A DNA stretch of 64,000 bases from IMG/VR virus record IMGVR_UViG_3300024520_000047, positions 181,875 to 245,874 of that record, one strand, 5' to 3'. The position numbers and the translations under genes are program-made. Within the stretch, counting starts at the first letter, position 1; each line of letters opens with the position of its first letter. The notes beneath the pieces were generated by a model. It worked only from the letters and a program-made list of their open reading frames with translations. It was not told the origin of the DNA and did no database searches. Shown here piece after piece: positions 4,078-20,905 of the stretch.

Positions 4078-5301
4078 ATGTCAAAATACAAAATTTTAGT
4101 TCTTCCCAGTGACAGAACAGGTGTATCCAAATTTAGGTCTGTAGACCCACACGTATGTTTACAAAAATTATATCCAGACGAATTTTGGGTCGATATAGAT
4201 TATGAACCTAAACTTAATGACGAAAATTATTTAAAAAAATATGATTTAATACATTACCATAGGTCATTACACGCCGATTATAAATTATCACAAAAAACTA
4301 TACCACTATTAAATAAATTAGGGATACCACATATTATGGATGTGGATGATTACTGGTTACCCAATATTGAACATCCCGCGTATATGTTAGTAAAAGGTAA
4401 TGGTATGGACCAACTTATAATGGATAACCTCAAATTAGCACAATATGTTACTACTACAACCCCTCTTTTTGCTAAGGAAATAAAAAGATTATGCTCTAAT
4501 GTACATGTATTGCCCAACGCTATTGACCCAAAAGAAAAACAATTTACAGCTAACCCTACAAAAAGTGACCGAATTAGGATTGGGTGGTTGGGGGGTTCTT
4601 CACATTTAGCAGACCTTCGTATATTAGAAGGTGTCGTAGATAAATTACTTCATTTTAAAGATAAAATACAGTTTGTTTTATGTGGTTTTGACACTAGGGG
4701 GACTATTACCGAATTTAACCAACAAACCAAACAACAAAAACAAAGACCCATTAAACCCAAAGAGTCGGTATGGTTTGAATATGAAAAAATATTTACAGGA
4801 AATTATAAATTGGTTGGTGATGAACAGAAAAAACAATTAATGCAATTTAAATTTGGTGAAGAGTATAAAAATTCTGACACACCTTACCGTAGAGTGTGGA
4901 CTAAACCCATCACCACATATGCCGAAAACTATAATAAATTTGATATAAGTTTAGCACCATTAAAACACCATAAATTTAATGAGGTCAAATCTCAATTAAA
5001 GGTCATTGAATCTGGATTCCATAAAAAAGCACTTATCGCACAGAATTTTGGCCCATATCAAATAGACTGTATAAACGCTTATGAACGAGGAGGCACATTT
5101 AATAAATCAGGGAACGCTATACTAATTGATGAAACTAAAAATCATAAACATTGGTTCCAACAACTTAAAAGACTTATTGAAAATCCAACATTAATTAAGG
5201 ATTTAGGCGAAAATTTATATGAGACAGTCCAAAAATATCATATAGAAAATGTAACTAAAGAAAGAGCTCAAATTTATAGAGACATAATAAATAAACACTA
5301 A
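4078..5301 (+). CDS. Glycosyltransferase, GT-B (GT4-like)
   Basis: DVDDYW, IGWLGGSSH, DISLAPL...FNEVKSQLKVIESG motifs typical of GT4-like enzymes. Confidence 0.75.
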   Translation: MSKYKILVLPSDRTGVSKFRSVDPHVCLQKLYPDEFWVDIDYEPKLNDENYLKKYDLIHYHRSLHADYKLSQKTIPLLNKLGIPHIMDVDDYWLPNIEHPAYMLVKGNGMDQLIMDNLKLAQYVTTTTPLFAKEIKRLCSNVHVLPNAIDPKEKQFTANPTKSDRIRIGWLGGSSHLADLRILEGVVDKLLHFKDKIQFVLCGFDTRGTITEFNQQTKQQKQRPIKPKESVWFEYEKIFTGNYKLVGDEQKKQLMQFKFGEEYKNSDTPYRRVWTKPITTYAENYNKFDISLAPLKHHKFNEVKSQLKVIESGFHKKALIAQNFGPYQIDCINAYERGGTFNKSGNAILIDETKNHKHWFQQLKRLIENPTLIKDLGENLYETVQKYHIENVTKERAQIYRDIINKH

Positions 5302-5315
5302 AACTAAAATAAAAG

Positions 5316-5552
5316 ATGTATTACATAGCAATTGTCGCATTTGAAACTGGGGTAATAGATAATCAAGGAAACCCAAAAATTAAAAAATTTAAATATATTG
5401 TAGAATCAGAATCAGTATATGAAGCTACTGAAAGATTAAGTCACTACTTAAGTGAAGATACTAGAGATTCCGAAATTGTTTCTTTAGTTAAAGCTCCCTA
5501 TGAAGATATTTTACACCCAACTTTAACACCAAAATATTATAGTAATGTTTAA
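5316..5552 (+). CDS. Small protein resembling Bacteroidota DUF4494
   Basis: KYIVESESVYEATERL...EIVSLVKAPYEDIL pattern recalls DUF4494 (YLVDAxSFTEAEAR...IKxAxYSEL). Confidence 0.45.
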   Translation: MYYIAIVAFETGVIDNQGNPKIKKFKYIVESESVYEATERLSHYLSEDTRDSEIVSLVKAPYEDILHPTLTPKYYSNV

Positions 5553-6231
5553 AAACATCAATAAACTACTTTTTTTAAATATGGAAACTGTTCCATTATC
5601 TAAATGTTATGAAGACTTTAGGGATGATTACCCTCACCATTATAAATTATGGGTAGAAAGTATTGGAAAAATGTCACACACTAAGGACCAATCGAATCAA
5701 AAAAATTTTGACGAGGATACTTCGTGGATACCCGAGTTTAGTAAAATAATCAGTATTAGTATCGGATTCGTAACTCCAGATGGTGAAAGACATATAAAAT
5801 CATTTATTTATCACGACGAAAAAAAATTATTATTAGAATTAAAAGAAACTTTAGAAAAAGTAGAAAAATTAGGTTTTGACATTTGTGGTCATAATATAAA
5901 AAAATTCCATTTACCTTTTATTAATAAACGAATGATTATTAATGGTATAACACCCCCTAAAATATTGCCTAAATATGACGATAAACCTTGGGAAACAAGA
6001 GTAATAGACCTTAAAGAAATGTGGAATGTTGGGTACTATAAATCTTATACAACTTTAGATTTGATAATGTTTTCATTAGATTTAGAGCCTAAAAACATAG
6101 TAAAAGCTAAAGAGACTATCTTTTCCTTATATTGGGAAGAAAAAAATACGAATAAAATAAAAGAGATTAGTGAAGATTATATATCGGCATTAATGGATAT
6201 ATCAGTAAAAATTAATACATTAAATGATTAA
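5545..6231 (+). CDS. DEDD 3'-5' exonuclease-fold protein with degenerate active site
   Basis: LFLNMETVP / GHNIKKFHLPFI / IDLKEMW correspond to LFLDIETVP / GHNxKxFDxPFI of PolB-like exonucleases. Confidence 0.65.
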   Translation: MFKNINKLLFLNMETVPLSKCYEDFRDDYPHHYKLWVESIGKMSHTKDQSNQKNFDEDTSWIPEFSKIISISIGFVTPDGERHIKSFIYHDEKKLLLELKETLEKVEKLGFDICGHNIKKFHLPFINKRMIINGITPPKILPKYDDKPWETRVIDLKEMWNVGYYKSYTTLDLIMFSLDLEPKNIVKAKETIFSLYWEEKNTNKIKEISEDYISALMDISVKINTLND

Positions 6232-6853
6232 AGAATTTAAAGAAATTAAAAACGTTGTTAAAAATCTTAATAAACTTAAAGAGTTAACGACAGATTTAGA
6301 TATTGAAAAAGGTAAATCGCTAGAAGAAGTTTTGGGCTTAGATTTACAGGATATTGAAAATATAACGACACCTTCAGAAAAACCTAAAATAGATATTAAA
6401 TTTATAAATAAAAGTGATAACGATGACCCATCCTATTTTCATGAGGGTGATAGTGGATTCGATTTTCGGGCCCACATTCCTAATTACGACCCACTCGAAA
6501 CCCCCAATATCGTGGTAGAAGTGGGAAAAGTATCTATAATACCTACGGGCCTTTACTTTGGGATTCCTAAGGGTTATGAATTACAAGTAAGGCCACGTAG
6601 TGGATTAGCAGCAAAATTTAATATTACTGTCTTAAATACACCCGGAACAGTAGACAGTAATTATCGAGGAGAAGTTAAAATAATATTAATTAATCTAGGT
6701 GAGACAGATTTTCAAATCGAAAATGGTGATAGGGTAGCTCAAGGGGTGATAACGCCTGTACTCACACCAGAGTGGTCTCAAATGGTAAAAGTAAATAAAC
6801 TAAGTTCAACGGACAGAGGAGAAGGGGGATTTGGAAGCACGGGGAAAATTTAA
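6224..6853 (+). CDS. dut: Trimeric dUTPase with ~55-aa N-terminal extension
   Basis: All five motifs: GDSGFD, RPRSGLA, GTVDSNYRGE, GDRVAQ, RGEGGFGSTG. Confidence 0.95.
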   Translation: MIKEFKEIKNVVKNLNKLKELTTDLDIEKGKSLEEVLGLDLQDIENITTPSEKPKIDIKFINKSDNDDPSYFHEGDSGFDFRAHIPNYDPLETPNIVVEVGKVSIIPTGLYFGIPKGYELQVRPRSGLAAKFNITVLNTPGTVDSNYRGEVKIILINLGETDFQIENGDRVAQGVITPVLTPEWSQMVKVNKLSSTDRGEGGFGSTGKI

Positions 6854-6858
6854 ATTAA

Positions 6859-7824
6859 ATGCAAAAAAGAATAATATTAATTACTGGTGGAGCCGGATTT
6901 ATTGGTTCTCATCTGGTTAAATATATGGTAGATAAGTATCCATCATATGAAATTCATGTGGTGGATAATCTCACATATGCTGGAAATAAAAAAAATTTAG
7001 ATGGTTATTTAGATAAAATAACTTTCCATGAAATAGATATTTCAGATAATCGTTTTATAAATGCTATTTTTAATATAAATAAATTTGACGGGGTTATTAA
7101 TTGTGCTGCTGAAACTCACGTAGATAACTCTATAGAATCACCACAGATATTTTTTACCAGTAATGTTGCTGGAACATTAAATTTAATAGAATCATCAGTT
7201 AAACATTCTGCACGTTTTTTACAAGTATCCACCGATGAAGTATACGGTGGTTTAGAATACAATGATGGTAGGACATTTTATGAATTCACACCATTTGCTC
7301 CATGTTCCCCATATGCCGCATCTAAAGCTGCTGCTGATTTAATGGTTCTTTCATTTGTGAATACCTACGACCTAAATGCTGTAATTACCCATAGTTCCAA
7401 TAATTTTGGGCCTGTACAACATTTGGAGAAATTAATACCAAAAACAATTAATTGTTTGAAGAACGATGAACAAATTCCAATATATGGAGATGGAAAAAAT
7501 ATTAGAAATTGGATTCATGTTAATGACCATGTGACCGCAATAGATAAGGTTTTTCATCTAGGTAAAAAAGGAGAACGGTATAATGTTGGTTCACCAATGG
7601 AATTAACTAATGTAGATTTAGTAAAAAAGATTTGTAATATTTACGACGCATTAAAGGGATTTAAAGCGGGGACATCTCATAGATTAATAACTTTTGTAGA
7701 AGACCGATTAGGTCATGATTTAAGATATTCCATAAATTACGATAAAATTTCCACTAAACTTAGGTGGAAACCAGAGTCTAATTTTATTTTAGCTTTAAAT
7801 GAAACTATAAAATCTTACATATAA
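6859..7824 (+). CDS. rmlB: dTDP-glucose 4,6-dehydratase
   Basis: TGGAGFIG, AAETHVDNSI, STDEVYG, SPYAASKA, DRLGHDLRY. Confidence 0.92.
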   Translation: MQKRIILITGGAGFIGSHLVKYMVDKYPSYEIHVVDNLTYAGNKKNLDGYLDKITFHEIDISDNRFINAIFNINKFDGVINCAAETHVDNSIESPQIFFTSNVAGTLNLIESSVKHSARFLQVSTDEVYGGLEYNDGRTFYEFTPFAPCSPYAASKAAADLMVLSFVNTYDLNAVITHSSNNFGPVQHLEKLIPKTINCLKNDEQIPIYGDGKNIRNWIHVNDHVTAIDKVFHLGKKGERYNVGSPMELTNVDLVKKICNIYDALKGFKAGTSHRLITFVEDRLGHDLRYSINYDKISTKLRWKPESNFILALNETIKSYI

Positions 7825-9353
7825 TGAGTATTAGTATTATATATAGCACTCGTAAAATTGACCCACACTTTAAAGTTCATGCAGAAAAAAGTTGTGGTAT
7901 CCCTAAGGTAGAAATTATTCCCATAGAAAACCCTAATGGAATTTCATTAGCTAAAACATATAATGACGCATTAAAAAAAGCTTCCTACGATATTGTGGTC
8001 TTTACTCATGATGACATAATTTTTGAAACTCGTAATTGGGGACCCAAATTATTAAAGTTATTTAAAAAAAATCCAGAGTTCGGAGTTATCGGAATAGCGG
8101 GTACTACAGACTTAATCGATGGTAGGTGGTGGACTATCAAGGAATCTATGAATGGTATAGTTAGTCACCAGCATGAAGGAAAAAAATGGACAAACACATA
8201 TTCACCCCATCAGGGAAATAAAATAACTGAAATGGTCGTATTAGATGGGTTATTTTTTGCTATAGATAAAACTAAAATTAAACATGTATTTGACGAATCT
8301 TTCGAAGGATTTCATTTTTATGAAATACCATTTTTCTTTAAAAATTATTTAGACGGCGTTAAATTAGGATTAACCACATATTTTAAAATTACACACCTAT
8401 CTATAGGAAGAACCAATGAAGAATGGGAACAAAATAAAATTAAATTTGAAGAAAAATTTAAAGACTCATTACCTGTAAGGTTAACCAATAATAAAACTTT
8501 TGACGAAAAATTAAATTTCGATAGAGATAGTATTGGTTTCGGGATGGTAACCTACAAAGCAGAGCATAGAATAAAACAAAGTGCTTTTACCGTACCTAAA
8601 TGGGTAAAAAATTTTGTTATTGTAAATGACGGAACACCGTATGACAAAGATTCCTATCCCTCTCATGCTCACATAATTCAACATGAAACCAATAAATCTG
8701 TTGGTGCTGCGAAAACAACCGCTATTAATCATCTTTTAAAAACTGACTGTGAACATATTTTCATAATGGAAGACGATATCTTAATAAAAGATGAGGGGGT
8801 GTTTGAAGAATACATAAAGCATTCTTTAATTTCGGGAATAAAGCATTTAAATTTTGCACTGCACGGTCCAGCTAATAAAAAAGGTAGTAAGGGATTTAGT
8901 ACATTAGACGATAGACAAGATGTGGATGGTGAACCAAACCCACGAATGATTATACCCTACCCAGAAAAAGATGTAAAAATAGCCTTATACCCAAACTGTG
9001 TAGGTGCATTTTCATACTATTCCAGACCGGTATTAGAAGACCTAGGTGGGTTTGACCCAGTTTTTAAAAATGCTTGGGAACATGTGGAACACACATATCA
9101 AGCCATTAAAAAAATGTATCACCCAGCATTTTGGTATTTCGCGGATATTGATGGGAGCTGGGAGTATTTAACCGACATACCAAATTCAATAGAAGAAAGT
9201 ACTATTGCTCACACACCAACATGGAATGAAAATTTTAGAAAGGGAACATTGTGGTATAAAAAGAAACACGGAGTATCCCCAACAGAAACCCCTGTTGCAA
9301 CACCAGAAATGGTTAAACAACAATTACAAGTAATATTTCAAAATAGAGGATAA
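7824..9353 (+). CDS. Two-domain GT-A (GT2-like) glycosyltransferase
   Basis: N-domain FTHDDI...LDGLFFA; C-domain VNDG...FIMEDDI; two DxD-type motifs. Confidence 0.8.
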   Translation: MSISIIYSTRKIDPHFKVHAEKSCGIPKVEIIPIENPNGISLAKTYNDALKKASYDIVVFTHDDIIFETRNWGPKLLKLFKKNPEFGVIGIAGTTDLIDGRWWTIKESMNGIVSHQHEGKKWTNTYSPHQGNKITEMVVLDGLFFAIDKTKIKHVFDESFEGFHFYEIPFFFKNYLDGVKLGLTTYFKITHLSIGRTNEEWEQNKIKFEEKFKDSLPVRLTNNKTFDEKLNFDRDSIGFGMVTYKAEHRIKQSAFTVPKWVKNFVIVNDGTPYDKDSYPSHAHIIQHETNKSVGAAKTTAINHLLKTDCEHIFIMEDDILIKDEGVFEEYIKHSLISGIKHLNFALHGPANKKGSKGFSTLDDRQDVDGEPNPRMIIPYPEKDVKIALYPNCVGAFSYYSRPVLEDLGGFDPVFKNAWEHVEHTYQAIKKMYHPAFWYFADIDGSWEYLTDIPNSIEESTIAHTPTWNENFRKGTLWYKKKHGVSPTETPVATPEMVKQQLQVIFQNRG

Positions 9354-10117
9354 TGATTAATTTTAAAGACGTTACATTTATAGTACCCGTAAGATTTGAT
9401 TCAGAAGATAGAAGAAATAATTTCCAAATATCAATGAATTATCTATTAAGGAACTTTGACACAAATATAATTGTATTAGATAGTGATAAAAAATCTAACA
9501 AAGATTTTGTTAAATCTGTTTCAGAAAAGATTAAATACGTTTTTGAAGAAAATAACGAAAAACTATTTCATAGGACAAGATTATTAAATGATATGACTAA
9601 AATGGCAGAAACAGAAATAATTGTTAATTATGATGTTGATGTTATCTTCCCAGTAGAACAATACCTAGATGCTAAGAAAAAAATAGAATCAGGATGTACA
9701 ATGTGTTTTCCGTATGCTGGAAAATTTTACGACATACCTAAAAAATTGTTTAAAAATATTAATGACGATTCATTAGATACAATACCACTAAATAATTGTA
9801 CTCTATTTAATCCAAATTCCGTTGGTGGTGCTATCTTTTTTGATAAAAAAAAATATGGGGACATTGGTTGGGAAAATGAAAATTTTGTATCGTGGGGGCA
9901 TGAAGACTGGGAAAGAATAGTTAGAGCCCAAAAAATGGGACATCAAGTATGTCGAACTAATGGGATTTTATATCATTTAACTCATTATAGAAATTTTAAT
10001 AGTTCTGACCAAAATCCATATTATAACTTTAATGGCCAAGAAATGCAAAAAATTAAAACGATGTCAAAAGAACAATTAAGTGAGCACATTAAAAAATGGA
10101 AATGGATAAAAAAATAA
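9353..10117 (+). CDS. GT-A glycosyltransferase (GT2/GT7-like)
   Basis: NYDVDV; GGAIFF...ENENFVSWGHEDWE matches the GT7-type WGxED motif. Confidence 0.8.
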   Translation: MINFKDVTFIVPVRFDSEDRRNNFQISMNYLLRNFDTNIIVLDSDKKSNKDFVKSVSEKIKYVFEENNEKLFHRTRLLNDMTKMAETEIIVNYDVDVIFPVEQYLDAKKKIESGCTMCFPYAGKFYDIPKKLFKNINDDSLDTIPLNNCTLFNPNSVGGAIFFDKKKYGDIGWENENFVSWGHEDWERIVRAQKMGHQVCRTNGILYHLTHYRNFNSSDQNPYYNFNGQEMQKIKTMSKEQLSEHIKKWKWIKK

Positions 10118-10126: not shown

Positions 10127-10906
10127 ATGAAATTAATAGAAGAATCTCTTATAAAAAATGATAAAATTATTAAAGAGTTAAAAAATAAAGCTGCCCAAGA
10201 AGGTGGAAAGAGACACCCTAACACTAAGGATATTTTTAATAGTAATACACAAAAAGGGCATTCCCAATTGGGCCAATATGGGGTAATCAAATCTATTTTT
10301 AAAAAATTGGAGGTAACCAACAAATATTATGTAGAATTTGGTGCAATGAATGGAACCTCACTATCAAATACTGCCGATTTACGAATACATGAAGGTTGGA
10401 GTGGTTTATTATTGGAGGGTACGTCACAGAGTATGCCCAATATTAATTTACATGGTAATACATGGGTTACTAAAGACAATATTAATGAAATTTTTAAAAA
10501 ACATAATGTACCACATATTTTTGATGTGTTAAGTATCGATATAGATGGTAATGATTATTGGGTGTGGGAAGCATTAAATTACGCCCCCCGTTTAGTAGTG
10601 ATAGAAACTAATCCGGGAATATCTAACGAATATCCAGTTGCCATTGAAGAGAATTGCCAAAATACAAATGAGGGTTATTTTGGGGCAAATTTACATGCTT
10701 TTTATGATTTAGCAAAACACAAAGGTTATGAATTAGTTACTACGTTAAGGTGGGATGCTTTCTTTGTAAAAAAAGAAGAATTTCATAAATTAGGGATACC
10801 ATTGATAAGTAAAAAAGAATGCATATCAGAATATTTCCACCCTTCGCCATTTTGGCTTAACTTTAAAAGTAATAAAAAATGGATACATTTAGAAAATAAA
10901 AAATAA
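10127..10906 (+). CDS. FkbM-like SAM methyltransferase
   Basis: YYVEFGAMNG...SNT, GLLLEG, VLSIDIDGNDYWVW. Confidence 0.7.
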   Translation: MKLIEESLIKNDKIIKELKNKAAQEGGKRHPNTKDIFNSNTQKGHSQLGQYGVIKSIFKKLEVTNKYYVEFGAMNGTSLSNTADLRIHEGWSGLLLEGTSQSMPNINLHGNTWVTKDNINEIFKKHNVPHIFDVLSIDIDGNDYWVWEALNYAPRLVVIETNPGISNEYPVAIEENCQNTNEGYFGANLHAFYDLAKHKGYELVTTLRWDAFFVKKEEFHKLGIPLISKKECISEYFHPSPFWLNFKSNKKWIHLENKK

Positions 10907-10940: not shown

Positions 10941-11795
10941 ATGATAGAAATATATTTTGCTCCTGCGTGGGGTTTATCTAATAAAGAAATGACCGATTGG
11001 TATAAAAAGCAGACACCTAGGAATGAGGGGGTATGGGAAGATACTATTTGTGTTTATGATAAAAACGAAGCCAATTATATTATAATGCAAGACACCACAA
11101 CTGAAAACATAGATAAAACTAAAACAATATTTTTTGGAAAAGAGCCTAATCATATAGCCAAACATAGGTGTAATAACTGTATGAAAGAGTTACACCATGA
11201 AAAAGGTAATACTTGGATGCCACAAGTTTGGTGGTTAGACTTTACTTATGATGAGTTAATAAATTTAAAACCATTCAAAAAATCAAAAAATCTAAGTGTT
11301 ATAAATTCAATTAAACAGTCAACAGAAGGCCACAGAAAAAGAATTAATTTAATAAACAATTTAGTTAAAAAATACCCTATAAATGTTGATGTTTGGGGTT
11401 CTATCACTAGTGGTAGGGAAAACACAGGGCCTTATAAAACTAAGTTACCACCAAAAGATAAGAAGAATGGTATATTACCCTACAAATACCACCTAACTAT
11501 TGAGAACGGTTCTTCACCTTATTATTTTTCTGAAAAAATTGTCGACCCTTTACTATGTTGGTCAATGCCTATATACTGGGGTTGTAAAAATATAGATAAA
11601 TTTTTACCTAAAGGCTCATATATTAATATTGATATTAATAAGAAGGGGGTTGAAGATGAAATAATTAGTATTTCTAAAAGTAACATTATGGAAGAGAATA
11701 TAGATAATATTGCTGAGGCAAGAGAGTTAATGTTAAATAAATATAATTTATGGCCTACAATAAAAAAATCTTTCATCGAAGATAATTTTTTTTAA
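10941..11795 (+). CDS. GT10 family alpha-1,3/4-fucosyltransferase-like
   Basis: YKYHLTIENGSSPYYFSEKI...PIYWG is the GT10 fucosyltransferase motif. Confidence 0.8.
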   Translation: MIEIYFAPAWGLSNKEMTDWYKKQTPRNEGVWEDTICVYDKNEANYIIMQDTTTENIDKTKTIFFGKEPNHIAKHRCNNCMKELHHEKGNTWMPQVWWLDFTYDELINLKPFKKSKNLSVINSIKQSTEGHRKRINLINNLVKKYPINVDVWGSITSGRENTGPYKTKLPPKDKKNGILPYKYHLTIENGSSPYYFSEKIVDPLLCWSMPIYWGCKNIDKFLPKGSYINIDINKKGVEDEIISISKSNIMEENIDNIAEARELMLNKYNLWPTIKKSFIEDNFF

Positions 11796-11798
11796 AAA

Positions 11799-13113: not shown

Positions 13114-13836
13114 ATGGAACCACTAAAAAAATGGCAAGAATTAACACAAAAAGAAAAAGAAAATTTTACTTTAAATAATAAAATTAAAGTAAAACATTGG
13201 TTAATAGATGGTAGGAATAATAAAAGTAAATTAAACGGTTTTTATGATAAAAAACTGGTTAATTCAATGATTGAAAAAATAAGAAATAAGGAAGTTAGTT
13301 ATTACGGACAATCAGATAAAGAATTATATGCCCTCTTAGAAAAAATAAATCTAAAAGATAAAAATGTTGCTATAATAGGTTCTACACAACCTTGGTATGA
13401 ATCTATAGTTATACATTATGGTGGCAAACCCGTAACTATAGAGTATTCAAAATTAAAAACAAATGATGATAGATTAAAATTACTAACAGTAGAAGAATTT
13501 TATAAAAACCCAGTTAAGTTTGATATAATATTTTCAATATCGTCTTTTGAACACGATGGATTAGGTAGGTATGGTGACCCAATAAACCCTTTTGGGGATA
13601 TTGACGCTATGTCAAAAATGAAAGATATTATAAAAGAGGATGGTTTATTATTCCTAGCTGTACCAATAGGTTTAGATACTATTTTTTGGAATGCTCATAG
13701 AATTTATGGTGAACATAGATACCCTAAATTAATAGAAGGCTGGGAAATTGTTGATAAAGTGAGTTTTAATGAAGGTAGATTAAAAAAAGAAAACGGAATG
13801 TACCAACCCGTTGTCGTATTAAAAAAAAAGAAATAA
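13114..13836 (+). CDS. DUF268-like methyltransferase-fold protein
   Basis: IIGSTQPWYE...SISSFEHDGLGRYGDPINPFGD...LAVPIG. Confidence 0.7.
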   Translation: MEPLKKWQELTQKEKENFTLNNKIKVKHWLIDGRNNKSKLNGFYDKKLVNSMIEKIRNKEVSYYGQSDKELYALLEKINLKDKNVAIIGSTQPWYESIVIHYGGKPVTIEYSKLKTNDDRLKLLTVEEFYKNPVKFDIIFSISSFEHDGLGRYGDPINPFGDIDAMSKMKDIIKEDGLLFLAVPIGLDTIFWNAHRIYGEHRYPKLIEGWEIVDKVSFNEGRLKKENGMYQPVVVLKKKK

Positions 13837-13838
13837 AC

Positions 13839-14372
13839 ATGTTAAAATTACATTTAGGTTGTGGTGATAAAATATTACCAAACTTTACAAATATAGATAT
13901 AAGACCAATGAAAGGCGTTGATTTAATTGAAGATATTAGTACGCTAAAGAAGATAGAAGATAATAGTGTTGAATTGATTTATGCTTGTCATGTTTTAGAA
14001 CATTTTGGTAGGTATGAATATGTTAATGTTTTAACTAGATGGTTCAATCTATTAAAGGATGGTGGTAAATTGAGGTTAGCGATTCCAGATTTCGAAAAGG
14101 TCGTAAATTATTATAATGAAACTAAAGATTTAAAAAAAATAATGGGTTTTTTATATGGTGGGCAAACTTATGAACAAAATTACCATTACTGTACTTGGGA
14201 TTTTAATACAATTAGTGAAGACTTAAAGTCTATTGGTTTTAAAGAGGTTTACAAGTATAACTGGAGGGATACTGAACATTCTGAAGTAGATGATTTTTCA
14301 CAAGCATACTTACCACATATGGATAAAGAAAATGGTGAACTAATGAGTTTAAACATTGAAGCAATTAAATAA
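13839..14372 (+). CDS. Class I SAM-dependent methyltransferase
   Basis: LHLGCG, IYACHVLEH, LKDGGKLRLAIPD. Confidence 0.85.
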   Translation: MLKLHLGCGDKILPNFTNIDIRPMKGVDLIEDISTLKKIEDNSVELIYACHVLEHFGRYEYVNVLTRWFNLLKDGGKLRLAIPDFEKVVNYYNETKDLKKIMGFLYGGQTYEQNYHYCTWDFNTISEDLKSIGFKEVYKYNWRDTEHSEVDDFSQAYLPHMDKENGELMSLNIEAIK

Positions 14373-14379
14373 TATTAAT

Positions 14380-14931
14380 ATGGAACTAGAAGTACAACAA
14401 AATTTAAATACGGATAATTGGTTCAATTACCAAGATTTTTATAAAGTAATTTCCGAAAAGGATTTTAATGTTTTTATAGAAGTTGGCACATGGAAAGGCC
14501 ATTCTATTTGTTATTTAGGTAATTTACTTAAAAATAAGAATGTTAAGATTTATGCGGTAGATTTATGGGATGAAACATATAAATACGAAGATAACCCCAG
14601 ACTTAAAAAACAAAAAGTTATTTTACATGATATTTTTAAACAAAACCTAAAAAATAATGGTCTAAGTGATAAGATTGTAGATATTAAGAGTTTATCATGG
14701 GAAGCCGCATCAAATTTTAAAGATGGAGAAGTAGATTTTGTTTTCATAGATGCCGACCACGAATATGAGTCTGTGATTAAAGATATTAAAGCGTGGTTAC
14801 CCAAAATCAAAAAAAACGGTATAATTTCAGGACATGATTACTTTAACCCTTGTGGGGTAAAAAAAGCCGTAGATGAGATTTTCGGTGATGACGTACTGTT
14901 TAACGGCCCTTGTTGGTTTGTAGAATTATAA
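14380..14931 (+). CDS. Class I SAM methyltransferase (Methyltransf_24-like)
   Basis: IEVGTWKGHS, AVDLW, FVFIDADHEYE, GIISGHDY; start moved from 14356 to the ATG after the upstream stop. Confidence 0.85.
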   Translation: MELEVQQNLNTDNWFNYQDFYKVISEKDFNVFIEVGTWKGHSICYLGNLLKNKNVKIYAVDLWDETYKYEDNPRLKKQKVILHDIFKQNLKNNGLSDKIVDIKSLSWEAASNFKDGEVDFVFIDADHEYESVIKDIKAWLPKIKKNGIISGHDYFNPCGVKKAVDEIFGDDVLFNGPCWFVEL

Positions 14932-14934: not shown

Positions 14935-15543
14935 ATGCCTATATCAGATAAATATAAATTAATTTTTGTTCACATACCTAAAAATGCTGGTACTGCGATA
15001 ACAAACACTTTAGAGATGACAGATATTGGTCATCATGGCTGGGGTTATTATAAATATAAGTACCCTAACAAATGGCAAAATTATAAAAAAATAAGTGTTA
15101 TTAGAAACCCTTGGGATAGGATTGTTTCGTGTTATGAATACGCTAAAATGGAGAAAAGTTATTGGCACGCAAAAGAAGGTAAGGCTAGAGCGGGTAAACA
15201 TTTAGATTATGATTTACTAAAAGACAAATCATTTGAACAATGTTTAGATATTTTAAAAAACACACCTCAAAAATTAAAACACCAAGGTTGGAGAAACCAA
15301 TCAGACTACATATATAAAAATAACCAACTAATGGTTGATTACACTCTAGATATGGATGAAATTAATGATAAATTAGGGGACATACTTGGTTTTGAAATTA
15401 ATATACCTAAAATCAACGTTAGTAATAATAAAAACTATAGAGATTATTACGTTAACAATAATTTAATAGATATTGTATCTAAAAATTATAAAATAGATTT
15501 AATAAATTTTAATTATGAAGAATCATTTAATATCTTATCCTAG
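14935..15543 (+). CDS. Sulfotransferase (family 2-like)
   Basis: FVHIPKNAGT (5'-PSB loop) and IRNPWDRIVSCY (3'-PB motif). Confidence 0.85.
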   Translation: MPISDKYKLIFVHIPKNAGTAITNTLEMTDIGHHGWGYYKYKYPNKWQNYKKISVIRNPWDRIVSCYEYAKMEKSYWHAKEGKARAGKHLDYDLLKDKSFEQCLDILKNTPQKLKHQGWRNQSDYIYKNNQLMVDYTLDMDEINDKLGDILGFEINIPKINVSNNKNYRDYYVNNNLIDIVSKNYKIDLINFNYEESFNILS

Positions 15544-16171
15544 GTCGGGTAATCATTGGGTTAGGTTTATTGTGGAGTGGTTTTCTGGTAAACCAACTAA
15601 AGGTATGAGCAAAGACGATAAACCCATATATATTAATTTAGTTAATAAGGATACTCTAAGTCATGTCTCTGGTACTGATTATATACTTTTTAAAAATCAT
15701 TGGTACTCAAACATTAAACCTAATGAAAACTTAATTTTAATAGTTAGAAACCCCAAGGAAGCTATTATGAGACATAAAAATAAATTTACTGATGATGATT
15801 TAAAATGGTTTATGGGTTTAATAAAATCTTTTCATAACCATAAAGGTAATAAAATGTTAATTTATTATGAAGACCTGCTAACTCAACCCGAGAATAACAT
15901 AGAAAAACTTTTAAAATTTTTAAATATTTTAGATAAAAAAAAATTAAGTATTTTTATGAGTAAGTATGAAGAATTATTTAATGAATCTATAAATGTTTAT
16001 GATAATACAGGTAAAAAAGAAATAATTTCAGGTGGTAAAGGTAGGGTTTCTAAGACTAAGGGTAAGAAATTAAATTTCCATAGTAATTCATTAACCAATA
16101 AAGATAATCAAAGATTTATAAATTATTTGAACAAGAGTGGGGTAAAAAAATACATAATTAGATATGAATAA
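15515..16171 (+). CDS. Sulfotransferase (family 1-like)
   Basis: ISYPRSGNHWVR and IVRNPKEA PAPS-binding motifs; IYYEDLL. Confidence 0.75.
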   Translation: MKNHLISYPRSGNHWVRFIVEWFSGKPTKGMSKDDKPIYINLVNKDTLSHVSGTDYILFKNHWYSNIKPNENLILIVRNPKEAIMRHKNKFTDDDLKWFMGLIKSFHNHKGNKMLIYYEDLLTQPENNIEKLLKFLNILDKKKLSIFMSKYEELFNESINVYDNTGKKEIISGGKGRVSKTKGKKLNFHSNSLTNKDNQRFINYLNKSGVKKYIIRYE

Positions 16172-18131: not shown

Positions 18132-18144
18132 TTAAATTAGTTAT

Positions 18145-18723
18145 ATGAGTAAAAAAATCATTTCAATACAGATTGATGGGGTTATTAGAGATACTGTAGA
18201 TAAAATTTTGGAGATATATGAAGCAGAAAATAAAATAACTCTGGAAAGACCCCTACCTTCCTTAGACTTACAAAAAGAATTAAATTTTAATTCCAAAGAA
18301 GAGTTAATAGATTTTATTTATGTGGAATCACCTATGCGGGTATTCGGTTACGCGAAAGAAATAGAAGATGACAGTGTATTATTTTTAAATGAGATATATA
18401 AAAAATTTAGAGATACTTATAAAATTGTTCTTTTTTCTAATGAAGTAGAGAAATCTAAACCCGCAACTCTAATGTTTTTAGCTAGAATAGGTTGTCTTAT
18501 AGACAATGTACAATTTTACCCACTAGAAGATTATAAAACTATATGGACTGAAAGTGATATTATAATTTCAGCTTCAACTGAAATTATAAAAAATAAACCA
18601 AAGGATAAAATTTTTATTAAATATGAAAATTACTACAATGATGATGTAAAATCAGAATTTAATATAAATTCCCTTAAACAATTATTAGAAAATGAATATT
18701 TTGAAAGAAATGAATTCGCTTAA
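18145..18723 (+). CDS. HAD/NT5C-like protein with degenerate catalytic motif
   Basis: ISIQIDGVIRD equivalent to the IDIDGVLRD motif I, nucleophile Asp replaced by Gln. Confidence 0.5.
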   Translation: MSKKIISIQIDGVIRDTVDKILEIYEAENKITLERPLPSLDLQKELNFNSKEELIDFIYVESPMRVFGYAKEIEDDSVLFLNEIYKKFRDTYKIVLFSNEVEKSKPATLMFLARIGCLIDNVQFYPLEDYKTIWTESDIIISASTEIIKNKPKDKIFIKYENYYNDDVKSEFNINSLKQLLENEYFERNEFA

Positions 18724-19009
18724 AGATTTCCAACTCGATATCATGGGAATGAAAATGATTATCGATATGGACGAATTAATAACTCAGGTTATACTTGATA
18801 AAAAAGAAATTGATGGTAAACTTGTTGATGATTTCGCTATTAATGCCCCAAAATATGAGATTTTTAGAATACTGTTAGAAGTAATTCTAACTTCTCAAGA
18901 AGAAATGGATAATAAAATGGGATATAAAAGTCTTGATAATTCAGGATTTCCCTTTAAATTAGCATTTAATACCTTAATCGAACATAAAATTTTAAAAGAA
19001 ATTAATTAA
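18692..19009 (+). CDS. Hypothetical protein
   Basis: 105-aa ORF overlapping upstream gene in operon. Confidence 0.6.
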   Translation: MNILKEMNSLKDFQLDIMGMKMIIDMDELITQVILDKKEIDGKLVDDFAINAPKYEIFRILLEVILTSQEEMDNKMGYKSLDNSGFPFKLAFNTLIEHKILKEIN

Positions 19010-19011
19010 AA

Positions 19012-20103
19012 ATGACAGAACAAACTGAAAATGCGAAAAAAATAGAAGAAGCACTTAATATTGTTAAAAACAAAGAATCTAAAATCTATTTTCTTACACA
19101 AGACACTAAAGGAAGACCAGCCGCGTCTGTAACTTATATTTATGAATTAGTAAGTACACTAAATAATCTGGGATATAATGCTATTATTCTTCATGAAAAA
19201 AATGACTATAAATTAAAGAGTGATGATGAAGGAATGGGCATTGAAGAATGGCTAGGGTCCGAATATACAGAATTACCACACGCTTCAGTGGAAGAAGGAC
19301 AACTCACTGTTGGTCCTTCAGATTTCCTTATAGTTCCAGAATTATTTGCTCATGTTATGGAACAGACAAAAGATATGACATGTACTAAAATAGTTTTATG
19401 TCAAGCTTATGACTATATTTTTGAAATGTTACAACCCGGAATTAATTGGGCACATTATGGTTATCATAAAGCAATAACAACTTCTACTTCCACTAAAGAG
19501 TATATTAATAGTATGTTTCCAAATATTGAAGTGAGTATAATTCCAGTAAGTATCTCAAATAAATTTACACCGATTGAGAAACCTAAACAGCCTCTAATAG
19601 CTATCCACACTAGAGAACCTAGAGATACGATGAAAATTGTAAAAGCTTTTTATGCGAGATTTCCACAATTTAAATGGATTACATTTAGAGATATGAGGGG
19701 GATGACAATAGAACAATTTAGTGAAGCTTTAGAGGATGCGTGTGCGGGTGTATGGGTTGATGACGTTTCTGGTTTTGGAACCTTCCCATTAGAATGTATG
19801 AAGGTAGGAATTCCTGTTATAGGTAAGATACCAAACCTCAGACCTGAATGGTTAAGGGAAGAAAACGGTTTTTGGACGTTTGAACAAAATCAAATGGTGG
19901 ATATTATAAACGCCTTTATTAAAACGTGGTTAGAAGATAGTGTTCCTGAAAAATTATTCACAGAAATGGAAGAAACAATAAAACCATATGATAGTGAAAC
20001 ACAAAAAAAAGAACTTACCACAGTTTTTGGGGGTCTTTTTGGTAGCCTTACCACAGAATTAGAAGGGGCATTAAATAAATTTACAATAAACGAAGAAAAT
20101 TAA
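19012..20103 (+). CDS. Glycosyltransferase, GT-B (GT4-like)
   Basis: DFLIVPE; SGFGTFPLECMKVGIPVIG resembles EGFGLPxLEAMxxGxPV. Confidence 0.7.
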   Translation: MTEQTENAKKIEEALNIVKNKESKIYFLTQDTKGRPAASVTYIYELVSTLNNLGYNAIILHEKNDYKLKSDDEGMGIEEWLGSEYTELPHASVEEGQLTVGPSDFLIVPELFAHVMEQTKDMTCTKIVLCQAYDYIFEMLQPGINWAHYGYHKAITTSTSTKEYINSMFPNIEVSIIPVSISNKFTPIEKPKQPLIAIHTREPRDTMKIVKAFYARFPQFKWITFRDMRGMTIEQFSEALEDACAGVWVDDVSGFGTFPLECMKVGIPVIGKIPNLRPEWLREENGFWTFEQNQMVDIINAFIKTWLEDSVPEKLFTEMEETIKPYDSETQKKELTTVFGGLFGSLTTELEGALNKFTINEEN

Positions 20104-20104
20104 T

Positions 20105-20905
20105 ATGAAAGACATTACAATTTTAATACCAGTACACACTATTAATGATAAATTAGATGAATACTTTACCAACGCTATTACAAGCATTAAAACACAAAAA
20201 AGTATACCGTCAAATATTTTAATAGTTAGCTCAACAGACAATAAATTAACAACTTACCTAGACTCTTTTGACTTTGGGGATTTAAATGTAGAAATTATAA
20301 AAAATGAAGGAGATACTACATTTATGGGCCAAGTAAACTACGGAGTTAATAAAATACAAACAAAATGGTTTTCCATACTAGAATATGATGATGAATATTC
20401 AAATATATGGTTTTCTAATGTGGAAAAGCATTACGACTATTATAATGATGTGGATGTATTTTTACCCTTAGTGGTAGATGTTACGGAAGATGGTCAATTT
20501 GTTAGTTTTACAAATGAAGCTGTATGGGCTATGAATTTCAGTGACAAAATGGGTTATTTAGATAATGCATGTTTGTTAAGATACCCTAATTTCCAAACTA
20601 GTGGTATGGTTATAAATAAAGAAAAATTTGAGGATATTGGTGGGTTTAAACCATCTGTAAAATTAACTTTTGTTTATGAATTTTTATTACGTGCAACATA
20701 TAACGACCTTAAGGTTTTCACTATCCCAAAAGTAGGTTACAAACATACAAACATGCGAGAAGGCTCTTTATTTTGGGATTATCGATATACTGAAGGTACC
20801 AATAAAATAGAACCCCAAGAAGCGTCTTTTTGGATTGAAACGGCAAAAAAAGAATATTTTTTCACTACTGATAGAGGTATAACGTACACCCCAGAAGTAG
20901 TTTAA
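20105..20905 (+). CDS. GT2 family glycosyltransferase
   Basis: ITILIPV, WFSILEYDDE, FEDIGGF, YEFLLRA. Confidence 0.8.
   Translation: MKDITILIPVHTINDKLDEYFTNAITSIKTQKSIPSNILIVSSTDNKLTTYLDSFDFGDLNVEIIKNEGDTTFMGQVNYGVNKIQTKWFSILEYDDEYSNIWFSNVEKHYDYYNDVDVFLPLVVDVTEDGQFVSFTNEAVWAMNFSDKMGYLDNACLLRYPNFQTSGMVINKEKFEDIGGFKPSVKLTFVYEFLLRATYNDLKVFTIPKVGYKHTNMREGSLFWDYRYTEGTNKIEPQEASFWIETAKKEYFFTTDRGITYTPEVV

What the first reader, a model, noticed from the sequence alone, without database searches (positions are those of the whole stretch)
4078..20905. 17-kb cytoplasmic glycan synthesis and decoration locus with no export machinery
Seen: about seven glycosyltransferase-like genes, Gmd+Fcl, RmlB, 3-4 methyltransferases, 2 sulfotransferases and an SGNH protein in one tightly coupled operon. 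None shows a signal peptide or TM segment, and there is no Wzx/Wzy/ABC exporter or priming transferase in the window. Known: Gmd+Fcl make GDP-L-fucose; virion glycosylation is documented in giant viruses and some mycobacteriophages; T-even phages glycosylate DNA. Inference: the acceptor is cytoplasmic, most likely virion proteins (structural ORFs here are Ser/Thr-rich) and less likely modified DNA bases, giving a complex phage glycocalyx.
Basis: partly seen in the sequence, partly recalled or inferred. Interest (0 to 1): 0.82.

Follow-up and report, generated by a model that had tools for sequence, protein, structure and literature searches.

The report
Exporter-less glycan island in marine jumbo phage
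A large uncultured seawater phage that probably infects Bacteroidota carries an 11-kb swappable block of soluble enzymes for a fucose-type, methylated and sulfated sugar chain next to two glycosyltransferases conserved across its whole clade, but the sequence alone cannot show whether the sugar goes onto the virus particle, the host surface or the DNA.

Summary
Window 6859-20905 encodes RmlB, Gmd, an Fcl-like reductase, six glycosyltransferases, four methyltransferase-like proteins, two sulfotransferases and a weak SGNH match. All are co-directional and tightly packed, and none has a TM-like segment. No exporter, polymerase or priming transferase was found in the window. The 5' end of the stated range (4078-6853) is not glycan synthesis, apart from one possible glycosyltransferase.

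The new result is the architecture. Window 6859-18131 is a flexible island between dUTPase and, in relatives, PhoH. In 74 related loci, 534 island ORFs fall into 201 clusters. All annotated families are soluble sugar-pathway enzymes, none of the 534 ORFs has two or more TM-like segments, and four relatives lack the island. Window 18145-20905 is a clade-wide core found in at least 561 viral contig stretches: a HAD-like protein, a 105-aa ORF, an Agt/AmGGT-like GT-B and a GT-A.

The phage is a distant T4-like jumbo phage (245-293 kb) from seawater, probably with a Bacteroidota host.

The acceptor is unresolved. My estimates are: phage (virion) proteins about 0.4, host lipid-linked glycans about 0.3, DNA about 0.1, other about 0.2.

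Similar clusters are already described in large cyanophages, so this is a new variant of a known kind.

The parts
3995..4050 (+). Terminator-like hairpin (3995-4015) followed by a promoter-like site (4022-4050). This is the only sizeable intergenic gap ahead of the gene block.
   Evidence: By eye it also reads as TTTG-N20-TATGTTTC, close to the Bacteroidota -33/-7 type. The related locus L016 has a terminator followed by a similar site at the same place. Function is inferred, not shown.
4078..5301 (+). 407-aa clade-conserved protein, a possible glycosyltransferase. It lies outside the flexible island.
   Evidence: phrog_7162 'glycosyltransferase', E 2e-39. No Pfam match above noise. Homologs at 25-35% identity in Phapecoctavirus, Campylobacter phages and huge phages. 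Also present in relatives that lack the island.
5545..6853 (+). PolB-type 3'-5' exonuclease-like protein (5545-6231) and dUTPase (6224-6853). These form the conserved left flank of the island and are not glycan genes.
   Evidence: dUTPase NF001862, 160 bits against a cutoff of 103. Synteny.
6859..7824 (+). dTDP-glucose 4,6-dehydratase (RmlB). First gene of the flexible island.
   Evidence: TIGR01181, 375 bits, above the 365 cutoff. Pfam GDP_Man_Dehyd and Epimerase.
7824..10117 (+). Two GT-A glycosyltransferases: a 509-aa Glyco_tranf_2_5 protein with an unassigned C-terminal half, and a 254-aa Glyco_transf_7C/GT2 protein.
   Evidence: 75-82% identical copies in L016 and L017.
10127..10906 (+). 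259-aa protein, probably an FkbM-type methyltransferase.
   Evidence: No Pfam or PHROG match. Atlas feature and structure neighbours carry Methyltransf_21. This is a lead only.
10941..12536 (+). GT10-type fucosyltransferase (10941-11795) and a GT2 glycosyltransferase (11799-12536).
   Evidence: Glyco_transf_10, 2.9e-13; Glycos_transf_2, 2.4e-5.
12514..13107 (+). 197-aa protein with a weak SGNH/GDSL match, possibly an O-acetyl esterase or transferase.
   Evidence: Lipase_GDSL_2, E 0.004, 18 bits against a cutoff of 32.9. Weak.
13114..14931 (+). Three SAM methyltransferases: DUF268 (13114-13836), Methyltransf_11 (13839-14372) and Methyltransf_24 with weak matches to the sugar O-methyltransferases CmcI and TylF (14356-14931).
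   Evidence: 7e-34, 5.6e-5, 1.4e-23.
14935..16171 (+). Two sulfotransferases: Sulfotransfer_2 (14935-15543) and Sulfotransfer_1 (15515-16171). PAPS would have to come from the host.
   Evidence: The first belongs to a family of about 196-aa proteins with 145 matches among 90%-identity cluster representatives (E at most 0.001), found on large phage contigs.
16164..18131 (+). [quoted passage not shown] Right end of the flexible island.
   Evidence: Gmd is present in 33 of 74 related islands and the Fcl-like gene in 27 of 74.
18145..19009 (+). Clade-conserved core, part 1: a 192-aa HAD/NT5C-like protein that lacks the nucleophile Asp, and a 105-aa ORF of unknown function.
   Evidence: Atlas lead. 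The alignment A3 shows Q, E or S at the first Asp of the DxD motif. Syntenic in 77 loci.
19012..20103 (+). Clade-conserved core, part 2: a 363-aa GT-B (GT4-like) glycosyltransferase homologous to AmGGT/Agt.
   Evidence: AlphaFold model with pLDDT 79. Best PDB match 8xsg, TM 0.69/0.73. Profile E 6e-12 to 8xsg. At least 561 viral contig stretches encode a relative. No match in 50,697 GenBank phage records.
20105..20905 (+). Clade-conserved core, part 3: a 266-aa GT-A (GT2) glycosyltransferase with an invariant YDDE (DXD-type) motif.
   Evidence: Alignment A4. Model with pLDDT 66; the best PDB neighbours are the GT-A fucosyltransferase WrtF, TM about 0.55. No match in GenBank phages.
20907..21605 (+). 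Sigma-70 region-2-like protein, possibly a late sigma factor. Conserved right flank.
   Evidence: Weak Sigma70_r2 and TIGR02937 matches. Always follows the core.
27933..27949 (.). Bidirectional terminator-like hairpin that ends the plus-strand block.

Best explanation
This is a two-tier, wholly cytoplasmic glycosylation system of a marine jumbo phage that acts on phage proteins, most plausibly virion surface proteins.

The clade-wide core is a GT-A and an Agt-like GT-B with two small partner proteins. It would lay down a conserved inner glycan on a conserved phage acceptor. The flexible island would supply extra nucleotide sugars: GDP-L-fucose from host GDP-mannose, and a dTDP-4-keto-6-deoxyhexose. 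It would also supply four further glycosyltransferases, including an alpha-1,3/4-type fucosyltransferase, plus O-methyltransferases and PAPS-dependent sulfotransferases. Together these would build a strain-specific, methylated and sulfated outer glycan, in the way an O-antigen sits on an LPS core.

Shown: the enzyme families, their solubility, the conserved-core and variable-island architecture, and the lack of any export or priming gene.

Inferred: that core and island act in one pathway, the order of steps, the early timing, and above all the acceptor.
For: 1. All island and core products are soluble. The same holds for 534 ORFs of 74 related islands, where no ORF has two or more TM-like segments.
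2. The Pfam censuses list only nucleotide-sugar enzymes, glycosyltransferases, methyltransferases, sulfotransferases and aminotransferases.
3. Island content is so variable (201 clusters, 113 of them singletons) that no island gene is common to all. The step that touches the acceptor must therefore lie outside the island. The adjacent clade-wide glycosyltransferases are the obvious phage-encoded candidates.
4. The core GT-B is homologous (E 6e-12, TM about 0.7) to AmGGT. AmGGT is more than 50% identical to Agt, which elongates glucose on N-glucosylated peptides in the cytoplasm (PMC12159676).
5. The core families are virus-only in the Atlas. They are absent from 50,697 GenBank phage records, so they are not recent captures from a host surface-glycan locus.
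6. There are working precedents. Chloroviruses encode GMD, GMER and soluble glycosyltransferases expressed early, and glycosylate their capsid protein in the cytoplasm (PMC5408694). Mycobacteriophage capsid and tail-tube proteins are glycosylated (as cited in PMC12619734). Virion glycoproteins were detected in the jumbo phage XacN1 (PMC5852040).
Against: - No acceptor is identified.
- No structural protein has S/T-rich tracts or C-terminal extensions like those of glycosylated mycobacteriophage proteins.
- No NGT/HMW1C-type or other recognisable protein-priming transferase was found in the window.
- Soluble glycosyltransferases are equally typical of lipid-linked glycan assembly. The core GT-A resembles an O-polysaccharide fucosyltransferase.
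- PhoH separates island and core in 65 of 74 relatives, so the two may be functionally unrelated neighbours in a hyperplastic region.
- The block lies behind a host-type promoter-like site and lacks the TATTTAT motif found in front of head genes. It is therefore not co-regulated with virion genes.
- About 70% of the genome was not examined.
Confidence: 0.4

Rival explanations
1. Remodelling of the host surface glycan. The soluble phage enzymes act at the inner face of the host membrane on the host's own lipid-linked intermediates: O-antigen or LOS, capsule, or the general Bacteroidota protein O-glycan. The host's priming enzyme, flippase and transferase then carry the altered glycan to the surface. 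This would change receptors and block superinfection or trapping of progeny on debris.
For: - This is the standard reading of very similar Gmd, Fcl, fucosyltransferase and glycosyltransferase clusters in large T4-like cyanophages (PMC9602691, PMC12801897).
- The enzyme families are those of O-antigen and capsule loci.
- The core GT-A's best structural match is an O-polysaccharide fucosyltransferase.
- The island is lower in G+C (27-28%) than the head region and is mosaic, like surface-glycan loci.
- A promoter-like site of host type fits early expression, which surface change needs.
- The phage also encodes envelope-directed proteins: a T9SS-tailed protein and a lipoprotein-like protein.
Against: - In 534 island ORFs not one membrane component was co-captured. 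No match closer than 49% identity was found for RmlB in reference genomes.
- The core glycosyltransferases are virus-specific and conserved across a clade that must span many hosts with different glycans.
- Known phage seroconversion systems (Gtr, Oac) are membrane proteins, and none is present.
- No case of this mechanism has been demonstrated for a lytic marine phage.
Confidence: 0.3
2. DNA hypermodification. At least the conserved core (GT-B and GT-A, next to a nucleotidase-like protein, dUTPase and exonuclease, and immediately upstream of the late-sigma-like gene) glycosylates a hydroxymethylated base in phage DNA. The island genes might extend that sugar.
For: - Phage GT-A and GT-B enzymes related to LPS and teichoic-acid enzymes put mono- to trisaccharides on 5hmC (10.1101/2023.12.21.572611).
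- The neighbours are nucleotide-metabolism genes.
- The 192-aa partner has an NT5C-like fold by Atlas features.
- From my own recollection, T4 alpha-glucosyltransferase also sits directly upstream of gene 55. I did not check this here.
Against: - No thymidylate-synthase-like hydroxymethylase, 5-methylpyrimidine dioxygenase or C5 cytosine methyltransferase was found in the 64-kb window or the 10 kb on either side. None appears among the ten conserved neighbours of the core in 77 loci.
- Such pathways are usually clustered (10.1101/2023.12.21.572611).
- The core glycosyltransferases have no tblastn match in any GenBank phage, including those with glycosylated DNA. T4 AGT and BGT are not among the top 50 fold matches.
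- The nucleotidase-like protein lacks its nucleophile.
- Six or seven transferases plus methylation and sulfation far exceed any known DNA glycan.
Confidence: 0.1
3. Another cytoplasmic or released product. The enzymes might make a free oligosaccharide, a glycolipid or a glycosylated small molecule, or they might glycosylate host cytoplasmic proteins as part of takeover. The conserved core and the island may serve unrelated functions.
For: - AmGGT itself uses free oligosaccharides and not glycopeptides (PMC12159676).
- PhoH separates the core from the island, and four relatives keep the core without any island.
- No acceptor is identifiable.
Against: - An 11-kb investment with multi-step decoration is typical of exposed, recognised glycans and not of metabolites.
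- A released polymer would need an exporter, and none is seen.
- There is no precedent in phages.
Confidence: 0.2

Closest known systems
'LPS / cell-wall synthesis and modification' gene clusters of large T4-like cyanophages (P-SSM2, S-SCSM1, S-SCSM2R, S-CAM7)
   Same: Both are large marine T4-like myoviruses. They share Gmd, GDP-fucose synthase, RmlB, GT10/GT11 fucosyltransferases and many GT2 and GT1 genes in a variable region. None has export machinery, and the acceptor is unproven. Gmd is about 50-52% identical (PMC9602691, PMC12801897).
   Different: This is a different phage lineage: the capsid protein is about 33% identical to cyanophage gp23, and the host is probably Bacteroidota. Here there are two sulfotransferases and three to four O-methyltransferases. 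The site is fixed, between dUTPase and PhoH. The adjacent clade-wide glycosyltransferase core has no homolog in any GenBank phage.
Chlorovirus (PBCV-1) cytoplasmic glycosylation of the major capsid protein
   Same: Both have virus-encoded GMD plus GMER and a glucose 4,6-dehydratase, soluble glycosyltransferases without signal peptide or TM segment, early expression, and methylated 6-deoxy sugars. The chlorovirus glycan core is conserved with variable decoration; I state this last point from my own knowledge (PMC5408694).
   Different: Chloroviruses are eukaryotic giant viruses and their genes are scattered, not clustered. The acceptor there is proven, and here it is unknown. No homology of the glycosyltransferases beyond fold was shown.
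Mycobacteriophage virion glycosylation (Che8-type; Freeman et al. 2023, known to me only through citations in PMC12619734 and PMC12801897)
   Same: Phage-encoded glycosyltransferases, and from my own recollection O-methyltransferases as well, modify capsid and tail-tube subunits in the cytoplasm.
   Different: No sequence relationship was found: the core glycosyltransferases have no tblastn match in any GenBank phage. The structural proteins here have no S/T-rich C-terminal extension. This system is far larger and includes sulfation.
NGT/Agt cytoplasmic protein N-glycosylation of Pasteurellaceae
   Same: The conserved GT-B is a sequence and structure homolog of AmGGT/Agt. Both are soluble enzymes that extend a sugar already attached to an acceptor.
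   Different: No NGT (HMW1C-like, GT41) was found in the window. Identity is only about 18%. AmGGT itself prefers free oligosaccharides (PMC12159676).
Bacterial O-antigen and capsule loci (Wzx/Wzy or ABC-transporter pathways)
   Same: The nucleotide-sugar genes, glycosyltransferase families, low G+C and mosaic hypervariability are alike. The core GT-A resembles WrtF.
   Different: There is no initiating phosphoglycosyl transferase, flippase, polymerase, ABC transporter, chain-length regulator or ligase, either here or in 74 related islands.
'Moraphages', aquatic jumbo phages of Flavobacteriia (PMC12619734)
   Same: Both have 200-307 kb genomes from aquatic samples, a predicted Flavobacteriia host, a phage DnaK, and a capsid protein near that of Rhodothermus phage. 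Four putative glycosyltransferase orthogroups are reported in the moraphage core genome.
   Different: Membership was not tested because no moraphage sequences were at hand. The paper places moraphages outside the T4 group, and it does not describe the island, the sulfotransferases or the core-plus-island layout.

Membership tests
Wzx/Wzy- or ABC-transporter-dependent surface polysaccharide locus | Initiating phosphoglycosyl transferase (WecA/WbaP type: Glycos_transf_4 or Bac_transf) | tested here: not met
   No such Pfam family in any ORF scanned. None appears in the censuses of related islands.
Wzx/Wzy- or ABC-transporter-dependent surface polysaccharide locus | Polytopic flippase and polymerase, or an ABC-2 permease with its ATPase | tested here: not met
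   No ORF with more than one TM-like segment in 1-61000. The only multi-TM ORF is a 114-aa protein at 61676-62020 without a family match. Zero of 534 related island ORFs have two or more TM-like segments.
Wzx/Wzy- or ABC-transporter-dependent surface polysaccharide locus | Nucleotide-sugar synthesis genes plus several glycosyltransferases in one cluster | tested here: met
Phage seroconversion modules (GtrABC, Oac) | Membrane-embedded GtrA flippase, GtrB bactoprenol glucosyltransferase, GtrC, or an acyltransferase_3 protein | tested here: not met
   No matching Pfam family and no TM proteins in the cluster.
Phage DNA glycosylation (T-even alpha/beta-GT; 5hmC sugar hypermodification clusters) | A nearby enzyme that makes the hydroxymethyl base (ThyA-like hydroxymethylase, or C5-methyltransferase plus 5mYOX/TET) | tested here: not met
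   Absent from 84 kb (window plus 10 kb each side) and from the conserved neighbourhood in 77 loci. The rest of the genome was not examined.
Phage DNA glycosylation (T-even alpha/beta-GT; 5hmC sugar hypermodification clusters) | Glycosyltransferase homologous to a known DNA glycosyltransferase | tested here: not met
   No tblastn match of either core glycosyltransferase in 50,697 phage records. T4 AGT and BGT are not in the top 50 PDB fold matches. I did not compare against the enzymes of Pyle et al.
Phage DNA glycosylation (T-even alpha/beta-GT; 5hmC sugar hypermodification clusters) | Modified nucleosides in virion DNA | not testable with these tools
   Needs LC-MS of nucleosides or native long-read signal.
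Virus-encoded cytoplasmic glycosylation of virion proteins (chlorovirus or mycobacteriophage type) | Virus-encoded soluble glycosyltransferases and nucleotide-sugar enzymes without secretory signals | tested here: met
Virus-encoded cytoplasmic glycosylation of virion proteins (chlorovirus or mycobacteriophage type) | Glycan covalently attached to capsid or tail proteins | not testable with these tools
   No isolate exists. No acceptor motif or S/T-rich extension was found.
Virus-encoded cytoplasmic glycosylation of virion proteins (chlorovirus or mycobacteriophage type) | Sequence homology to the proven viral enzymes | tested here: not met
   Only fold-level similarity to giant-virus and phage GT1/GT4 proteins. 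No tblastn match in GenBank phages.
NGT/Agt cytoplasmic N-glycosylation | Agt-type GT-B elongating enzyme | tested here: met
   Profile E 6e-12 and TM 0.69/0.73 to 8xsg, AmGGT.
NGT/Agt cytoplasmic N-glycosylation | NGT (HMW1C-like GT41) priming enzyme | tested here: not met
   No GT41-type Pfam match in any window ORF.
Glycan gene clusters of large T4-like marine phages (cyanophage 'LPS genes') | T4-like structural module, plus Gmd, Fcl, fucosyltransferase and multiple glycosyltransferases in a variable region without exporters | tested here: met
   Gp23, gp20 and gp21 families. Enzymes. Variability. Cyanophage Gmd about 50-52% identical.

The most novel reading that the evidence does not exclude
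A clade of aquatic Bacteroidota jumbo phages wears a phage-made glycocalyx. A conserved inner glycan is laid on virion proteins by the clade-wide GT-A and GT-B core. A hypervariable outer part, fucose-rich, O-methylated and sulfated, is encoded by a swappable island, so it would be in effect a phage O-antigen. Because marine Flavobacteriia specialise in binding sulfated fucans, such a coat could even act as bait for host glycan-binding proteins. That last step is pure speculation.
Probability: 0.35. Interest if true: 0.85.

Novelty: new variant of a known kind. Interest (0 to 1): 0.55.

Why it matters
Large marine phages often carry 'LPS-like' sugar genes whose target has never been shown. This clade offers a clean test case. 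It has a fixed insertion site and a conserved two-transferase core present in hundreds of viral contigs. It also includes natural relatives with no island, which can serve as controls. Its enzyme set predicts an easily detectable product: methylated, sulfated deoxyhexose glycans.

If the target is the virion, protein glycosylation would extend to tailed phages of Gram-negative marine bacteria. That would bear on adsorption, particle stickiness, grazing and carbon flux. If the target is the host surface, this would be a lytic-phage route to receptor remodelling that uses only soluble enzymes. Either outcome would re-annotate a common class of 'auxiliary metabolic genes'.

Tried and rejected
- Megablast of the island against GenBank phages found nothing.
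- RmlB against reference genomes, to find a donor or host, gave at most 49% identity in unrelated taxa. This is uninformative.
- No RNA sequencing run was listed for Gmd, so expression and transcript starts could not be checked.
- I laid contigs of four seawater runs with partial k-mer share on 10101-16100, hoping to see cassette swaps. They hold the same phage at low depth and at least 99% identity, so the partial share reflects coverage and not variation.
- The Atlas lead that the 192-aa core protein is an NT5C nucleotidase is not upheld. The nucleophile Asp is missing in all ten relatives.
- The 556-aa and 639-aa ORFs downstream of the sigma-like gene looked to me like baseplate or tape-measure proteins. 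They have no Pfam, PHROG, PDB or GenBank-phage match, so I make no such claim.
- The count of sigma-70-type promoter matches is not above chance. I use only the position of the site at 4022-4050.
- The 114-aa four-TM ORF at 61676-62020 was considered as a small flippase. It has no family match even at E 1, and a near-identical variant contig lacks it.
- Walking the remaining 180-230 kb of the genome was not feasible at 10 kb per look-up. The whole-genome check for exporters and hydroxymethylases therefore remains undone.
- I rejected treating Gmd as part of the conserved core, because it is present in only 33 of 74 islands.

Full report
WHAT THE WINDOW IS

The window is the last 64 kb of a 245,874-bp seawater metagenome contig (JGI 3300024520). 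The same phage also sits on a 293,317-bp contig from a sister sample.

It is a distant T4-like phage. It has a Gp23-family capsid protein (27974-29770, minus strand), a gp21-type prohead protease, a gp20-type portal and a T4-type large terminase. The capsid protein is only about 41% identical to its best GenBank relatives: uncultured huge phages, Microcystis phage Mel-JY01, Flavobacterium phage immuto and Rhodothermus phage RM378. The window also encodes DnaK and a ClpB-like chaperone.

The host is probably a member of the Bacteroidota. The pattern TTTG-N18-21-TAnnTTTG occurs 8 times against 3.5 expected. Five of those hits lie in intergenic gaps and point at the next gene. In addition, an 830-aa protein just past the window end carries a type IX secretion C-terminal domain.

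The traits match the recently described 'moraphages'. Those are 200-307 kb aquatic phages with predicted Flavobacteriia hosts, a phage DnaK, a capsid protein near that of Rhodothermus phage, and four core glycosyltransferase orthogroups (PMC12619734). I could not test membership.

CHECK OF THE OBSERVATION

- Nucleotide-sugar enzymes: RmlB (above the NCBIfam equivalog cutoff), Gmd (4e-122) and a reductase whose best match is GDP-L-fucose synthase.
- Glycosyltransferases: four GT-A enzymes in the island, one of them a GT10 fucosyltransferase. A GT-B and a further GT-A lie at the 3' end.
- Methyltransferases: three clear ones, plus one FkbM-like lead.
- Sulfotransferases: two.
- SGNH: one weak match.

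Genes abut or overlap. No product in 4078-21605 has a TM-like segment. No exporter, polymerase or priming transferase family appears in any window ORF scanned.

Two corrections are needed. First, 5316-6853 encodes a small ORF, an exonuclease and a genuine dUTPase. The 407-aa protein at 4078-5301 is a glycosyltransferase only by a PHROG match. Second, the structural proteins are not notably Ser/Thr-rich and have no S/T tracts.

THE MAIN NEW RESULT: A FLEXIBLE ISLAND NEXT TO A CLADE-WIDE CORE

I compared the window with relatives from IMG/VR and other assemblies.

The block HAD-like 192 aa, 105-aa ORF, GT-B, GT-A, sigma-like, 122 aa, 639 aa, 63 aa, 556 aa, 517 aa is syntenic in 77 loci. At least 561 viral contig stretches encode a relative of the GT-B.

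Upstream of this block, between dUTPase and PhoH, lies a region of 0 to about 14 kb whose content differs from phage to phage. PhoH is present in 65 of 74 relatives and is missing in this phage.
- 534 ORFs fall into 201 clusters, of which 113 are singletons.
- Gmd occurs in 33 of 74 loci and Fcl-like genes in 27 of 74.
- The remaining families are RmlB/C/D-type enzymes, DegT aminotransferases, UDP-glucose dehydrogenases, FdtA, UDP-GlcNAc 2-epimerase, a sugar kinase and nucleotidyltransferase, GT2/GT10/GT11/GT17/GT1 transferases, FkbM/TylF/MT24 methyltransferases and sulfotransferases.
- None of the 534 ORFs has two or more TM-like segments.
- Four relatives (L044, L045, L048, L049) have no island at all, and the core follows dUTPase and PhoH directly.

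The window's own island (6859-18131) is a mosaic. One relative shares the methyltransferase and sulfotransferase part at 64-93% identity. Two others share the GT2_5, GT7C and GT10 part at 62-82%. Island G+C is 27-28%, against 32-39% in the head region.

The same short sulfotransferase family also occurs in a different, Kdo-type glycan cluster of a 462-kb huge phage.

THE CORE PROTEINS

- **GT-B (19012-20103).** The model is confident (pLDDT 79). Its best solved relative, by both fold (TM 0.69/0.73) and sequence profile (E 6e-12), is AmGGT of Actinobacillus minor. AmGGT is more than 50% identical to Agt, the enzyme that elongates glucose on N-glucosylated peptides in the cytoplasmic NGT/Agt system, although AmGGT itself prefers free oligosaccharides (PMC12159676). 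Other fold neighbours are general GT4 enzymes. T4 DNA glucosyltransferases are not in the top 50.
- **GT-A (20105-20905).** It keeps an invariant YDDE motif. Its best fold neighbours, at modest TM of about 0.55, are the GT-A fucosyltransferase WrtF of a rhizobial O-polysaccharide (PMC12595478).
- **The 192-aa protein.** It has NT5C/HAD-like features but lacks the nucleophile Asp in all relatives.
- **Distribution.** Neither core glycosyltransferase has any tblastn match in 50,697 GenBank phage records or any PHROG family. The Atlas neighbours are virus-only clusters.

EXPRESSION SIGNALS (INFERRED ONLY)

The only real gap ahead of the block holds a terminator-like hairpin followed by a promoter-like site (3995-4050). 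The block ends at a bidirectional terminator (27933-27949).

A motif, TATTTAT, lies within 45 nt upstream of 15 of 67 ORFs, against 1.9% of background windows. It sits mainly before head, terminase and fibre genes. In relatives it is conserved before the 122-aa and 517-aa genes. It is absent from the island here. Among the seven relatives inspected, it occurs upstream of the core block only once (L008, in the gap before its 192-aa core gene).

The glycan genes therefore look like early or middle genes, grouped with nucleotide-metabolism genes and the sigma-like gene. This does not discriminate between acceptors. Chlorovirus glycosyltransferases are also early (PMC5408694).

MECHANISM AND RIVALS

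Island content is too variable to contain a common acceptor-touching enzyme. That step must therefore be supplied by something constant: either the phage's clade-wide glycosyltransferases acting on a conserved phage acceptor, or the host's own priming machinery.

I favour the first option, a two-tier cytoplasmic glycosylation of phage and probably virion proteins, at about 0.4. The reasons are:
- the complete and consistent absence of membrane components;
- the virus-specific core;
- the homology to Agt;
- working precedents in chloroviruses and mycobacteriophages, plus the glycoproteins seen in jumbo phage XacN1 (PMC5408694, PMC12619734, PMC5852040).

Remodelling of the host surface glycan through host lipid carriers and exporters is a serious rival, at about 0.3. 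Soluble transferases are the rule in such pathways. It is also the usual reading of the very similar cyanophage clusters (PMC9602691, PMC12801897).

DNA glycosylation gets about 0.1. No hydroxymethylase, dioxygenase or C5-methyltransferase lies in 84 kb or in the conserved neighbourhood, although such pathways usually cluster (10.1101/2023.12.21.572611). The chemistry is also far more complex than any known DNA glycan. The nucleotide-metabolism neighbours keep this option alive for the core alone.

Other products, or unrelated functions of core and island, take the remaining 0.2.

COMPARISON AND NOVELTY

Glycan gene clusters without exporters are already documented in large marine T4-like phages, and the acceptor is unknown there too. 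The new elements here are:
- the lineage;
- the sulfotransferases and multiple O-methyltransferases;
- the fixed insertion site;
- the island-less natural variants;
- the adjacent glycosyltransferase core shared by hundreds of contigs.

I rate it a new variant of a known kind. It is of moderate interest as it stands and of high interest if the virion reading proves right.

LIMITS

- About 70% of the genome was not examined.
- No transcript or protein data exist.
- TM prediction is a simple hydropathy scan.
- Several assignments are leads rather than tests: the FkbM-like protein, the HAD-like protein, the SGNH match, the sigma-like protein and the WrtF-like GT-A.

Noticed in passing
L030:18996-20456 (about 8.5-10 kb beyond the window end, minus strand): An 830-aa phage protein with a MAM domain and a type IX secretion C-terminal sorting domain (Por_Secre_tail). 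This is a phage-encoded T9SS cargo. It points to a Bacteroidota host and to phage proteins displayed on the host surface.
   Followed up: partly
window 27375-27406 (+), 51215-51246 (-), 56902-56933 (+), 62539-62569 (-), 62919-62950 (+): Bacteroidota-type promoter pattern TTTG-N18-21-TAnnTTTG, mostly TTTGG...TATCTTTG, in intergenic gaps and pointing at the next gene. There are 8 matches in the window against 3.5 expected.
   Followed up: partly
window, within 45 nt upstream of 15 ORFs (e.g. 21650, 25820, 31597-32307, 36009-37727, 47954-50341, 52989-55271, 59123-61624): Recurrent TATTTAT motif upstream of head, terminase and fibre genes: 22% of ORFs against 1.9% of background windows. It is conserved at the same two sites in relatives. 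It is a candidate phage late promoter that differs from T4's TATAAATA.
   Followed up: partly
window 43862-45727 (-) and 45814-47949 (+): A full-length DnaK (Hsp70, 855 bits) and a two-domain ClpB/Hsp100-like AAA+ chaperone, divergently arranged. The phage carries its own disaggregase pair.
   Followed up: no
window 47954-50341 (-): A 795-aa protein with YadA-head-type repeats (the HAEG motif many times over) and 22% Ser+Thr, preceded by the TATTTAT motif. It is probably a fibre or adhesin.
   Followed up: no
L018:1-6654 (the 10 kb upstream of the window, minus strand): A run of six paralogous Laminin_G_3 (concanavalin-like lectin fold) proteins next to a PTL_trimer protein and a 1089-aa protein. 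This is a probable tail-fibre or receptor-binding battery with lectin-type domains.
   Followed up: no
window 27433-27927 (+): A 164-aa CAP/SCP-family protein with a hydrophobic N-terminus, behind a host-type promoter. It is only 35-38% identical in relatives, while its neighbours are 70-80% identical.
   Followed up: no
window 61676-62020 (+): A 114-aa protein with four TM-like segments and no family match. It is present on one near-identical variant contig (L031) and absent from another (L030).
   Followed up: partly
window 56961-57866 (+): A 301-aa protein with a lipoprotein-like signal (hydrophobic N-terminus ending in Cys) and 20.6% Ser+Thr, behind a host-type promoter. It may be an envelope-directed phage protein.
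   Followed up: no
window 27974-29770 (-): The Gp23-family capsid protein is 598 aa. The Pfam model matches in two stretches, leaving an insertion of roughly 230 residues (about 110-337) that is rich in Cys, Gly and Thr.
   Followed up: no
window 51443-51517 (+): A single tRNA-Arg (TCT) inside a 925-nt stretch without an ORF.
   Followed up: no
L028 (huge phage LR756500.1, 462 kb): 3269-15718: An unrelated huge phage carries another exporter-less glycan cluster with the same short sulfotransferase family. It also holds DegT, a GT29 sialyltransferase-like gene, a KpsS/KpsC-like Capsule_synth gene, a pyruvyl transferase, and KdsA, KdsB and KdsD homologs.
   Followed up: partly
L044, L045, L048, L049: Relatives in which dUTPase is followed directly by PhoH and the glycosyltransferase core, with no island. 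In L044 and L045 the core GT-A also seems to be missing.
   Followed up: partly
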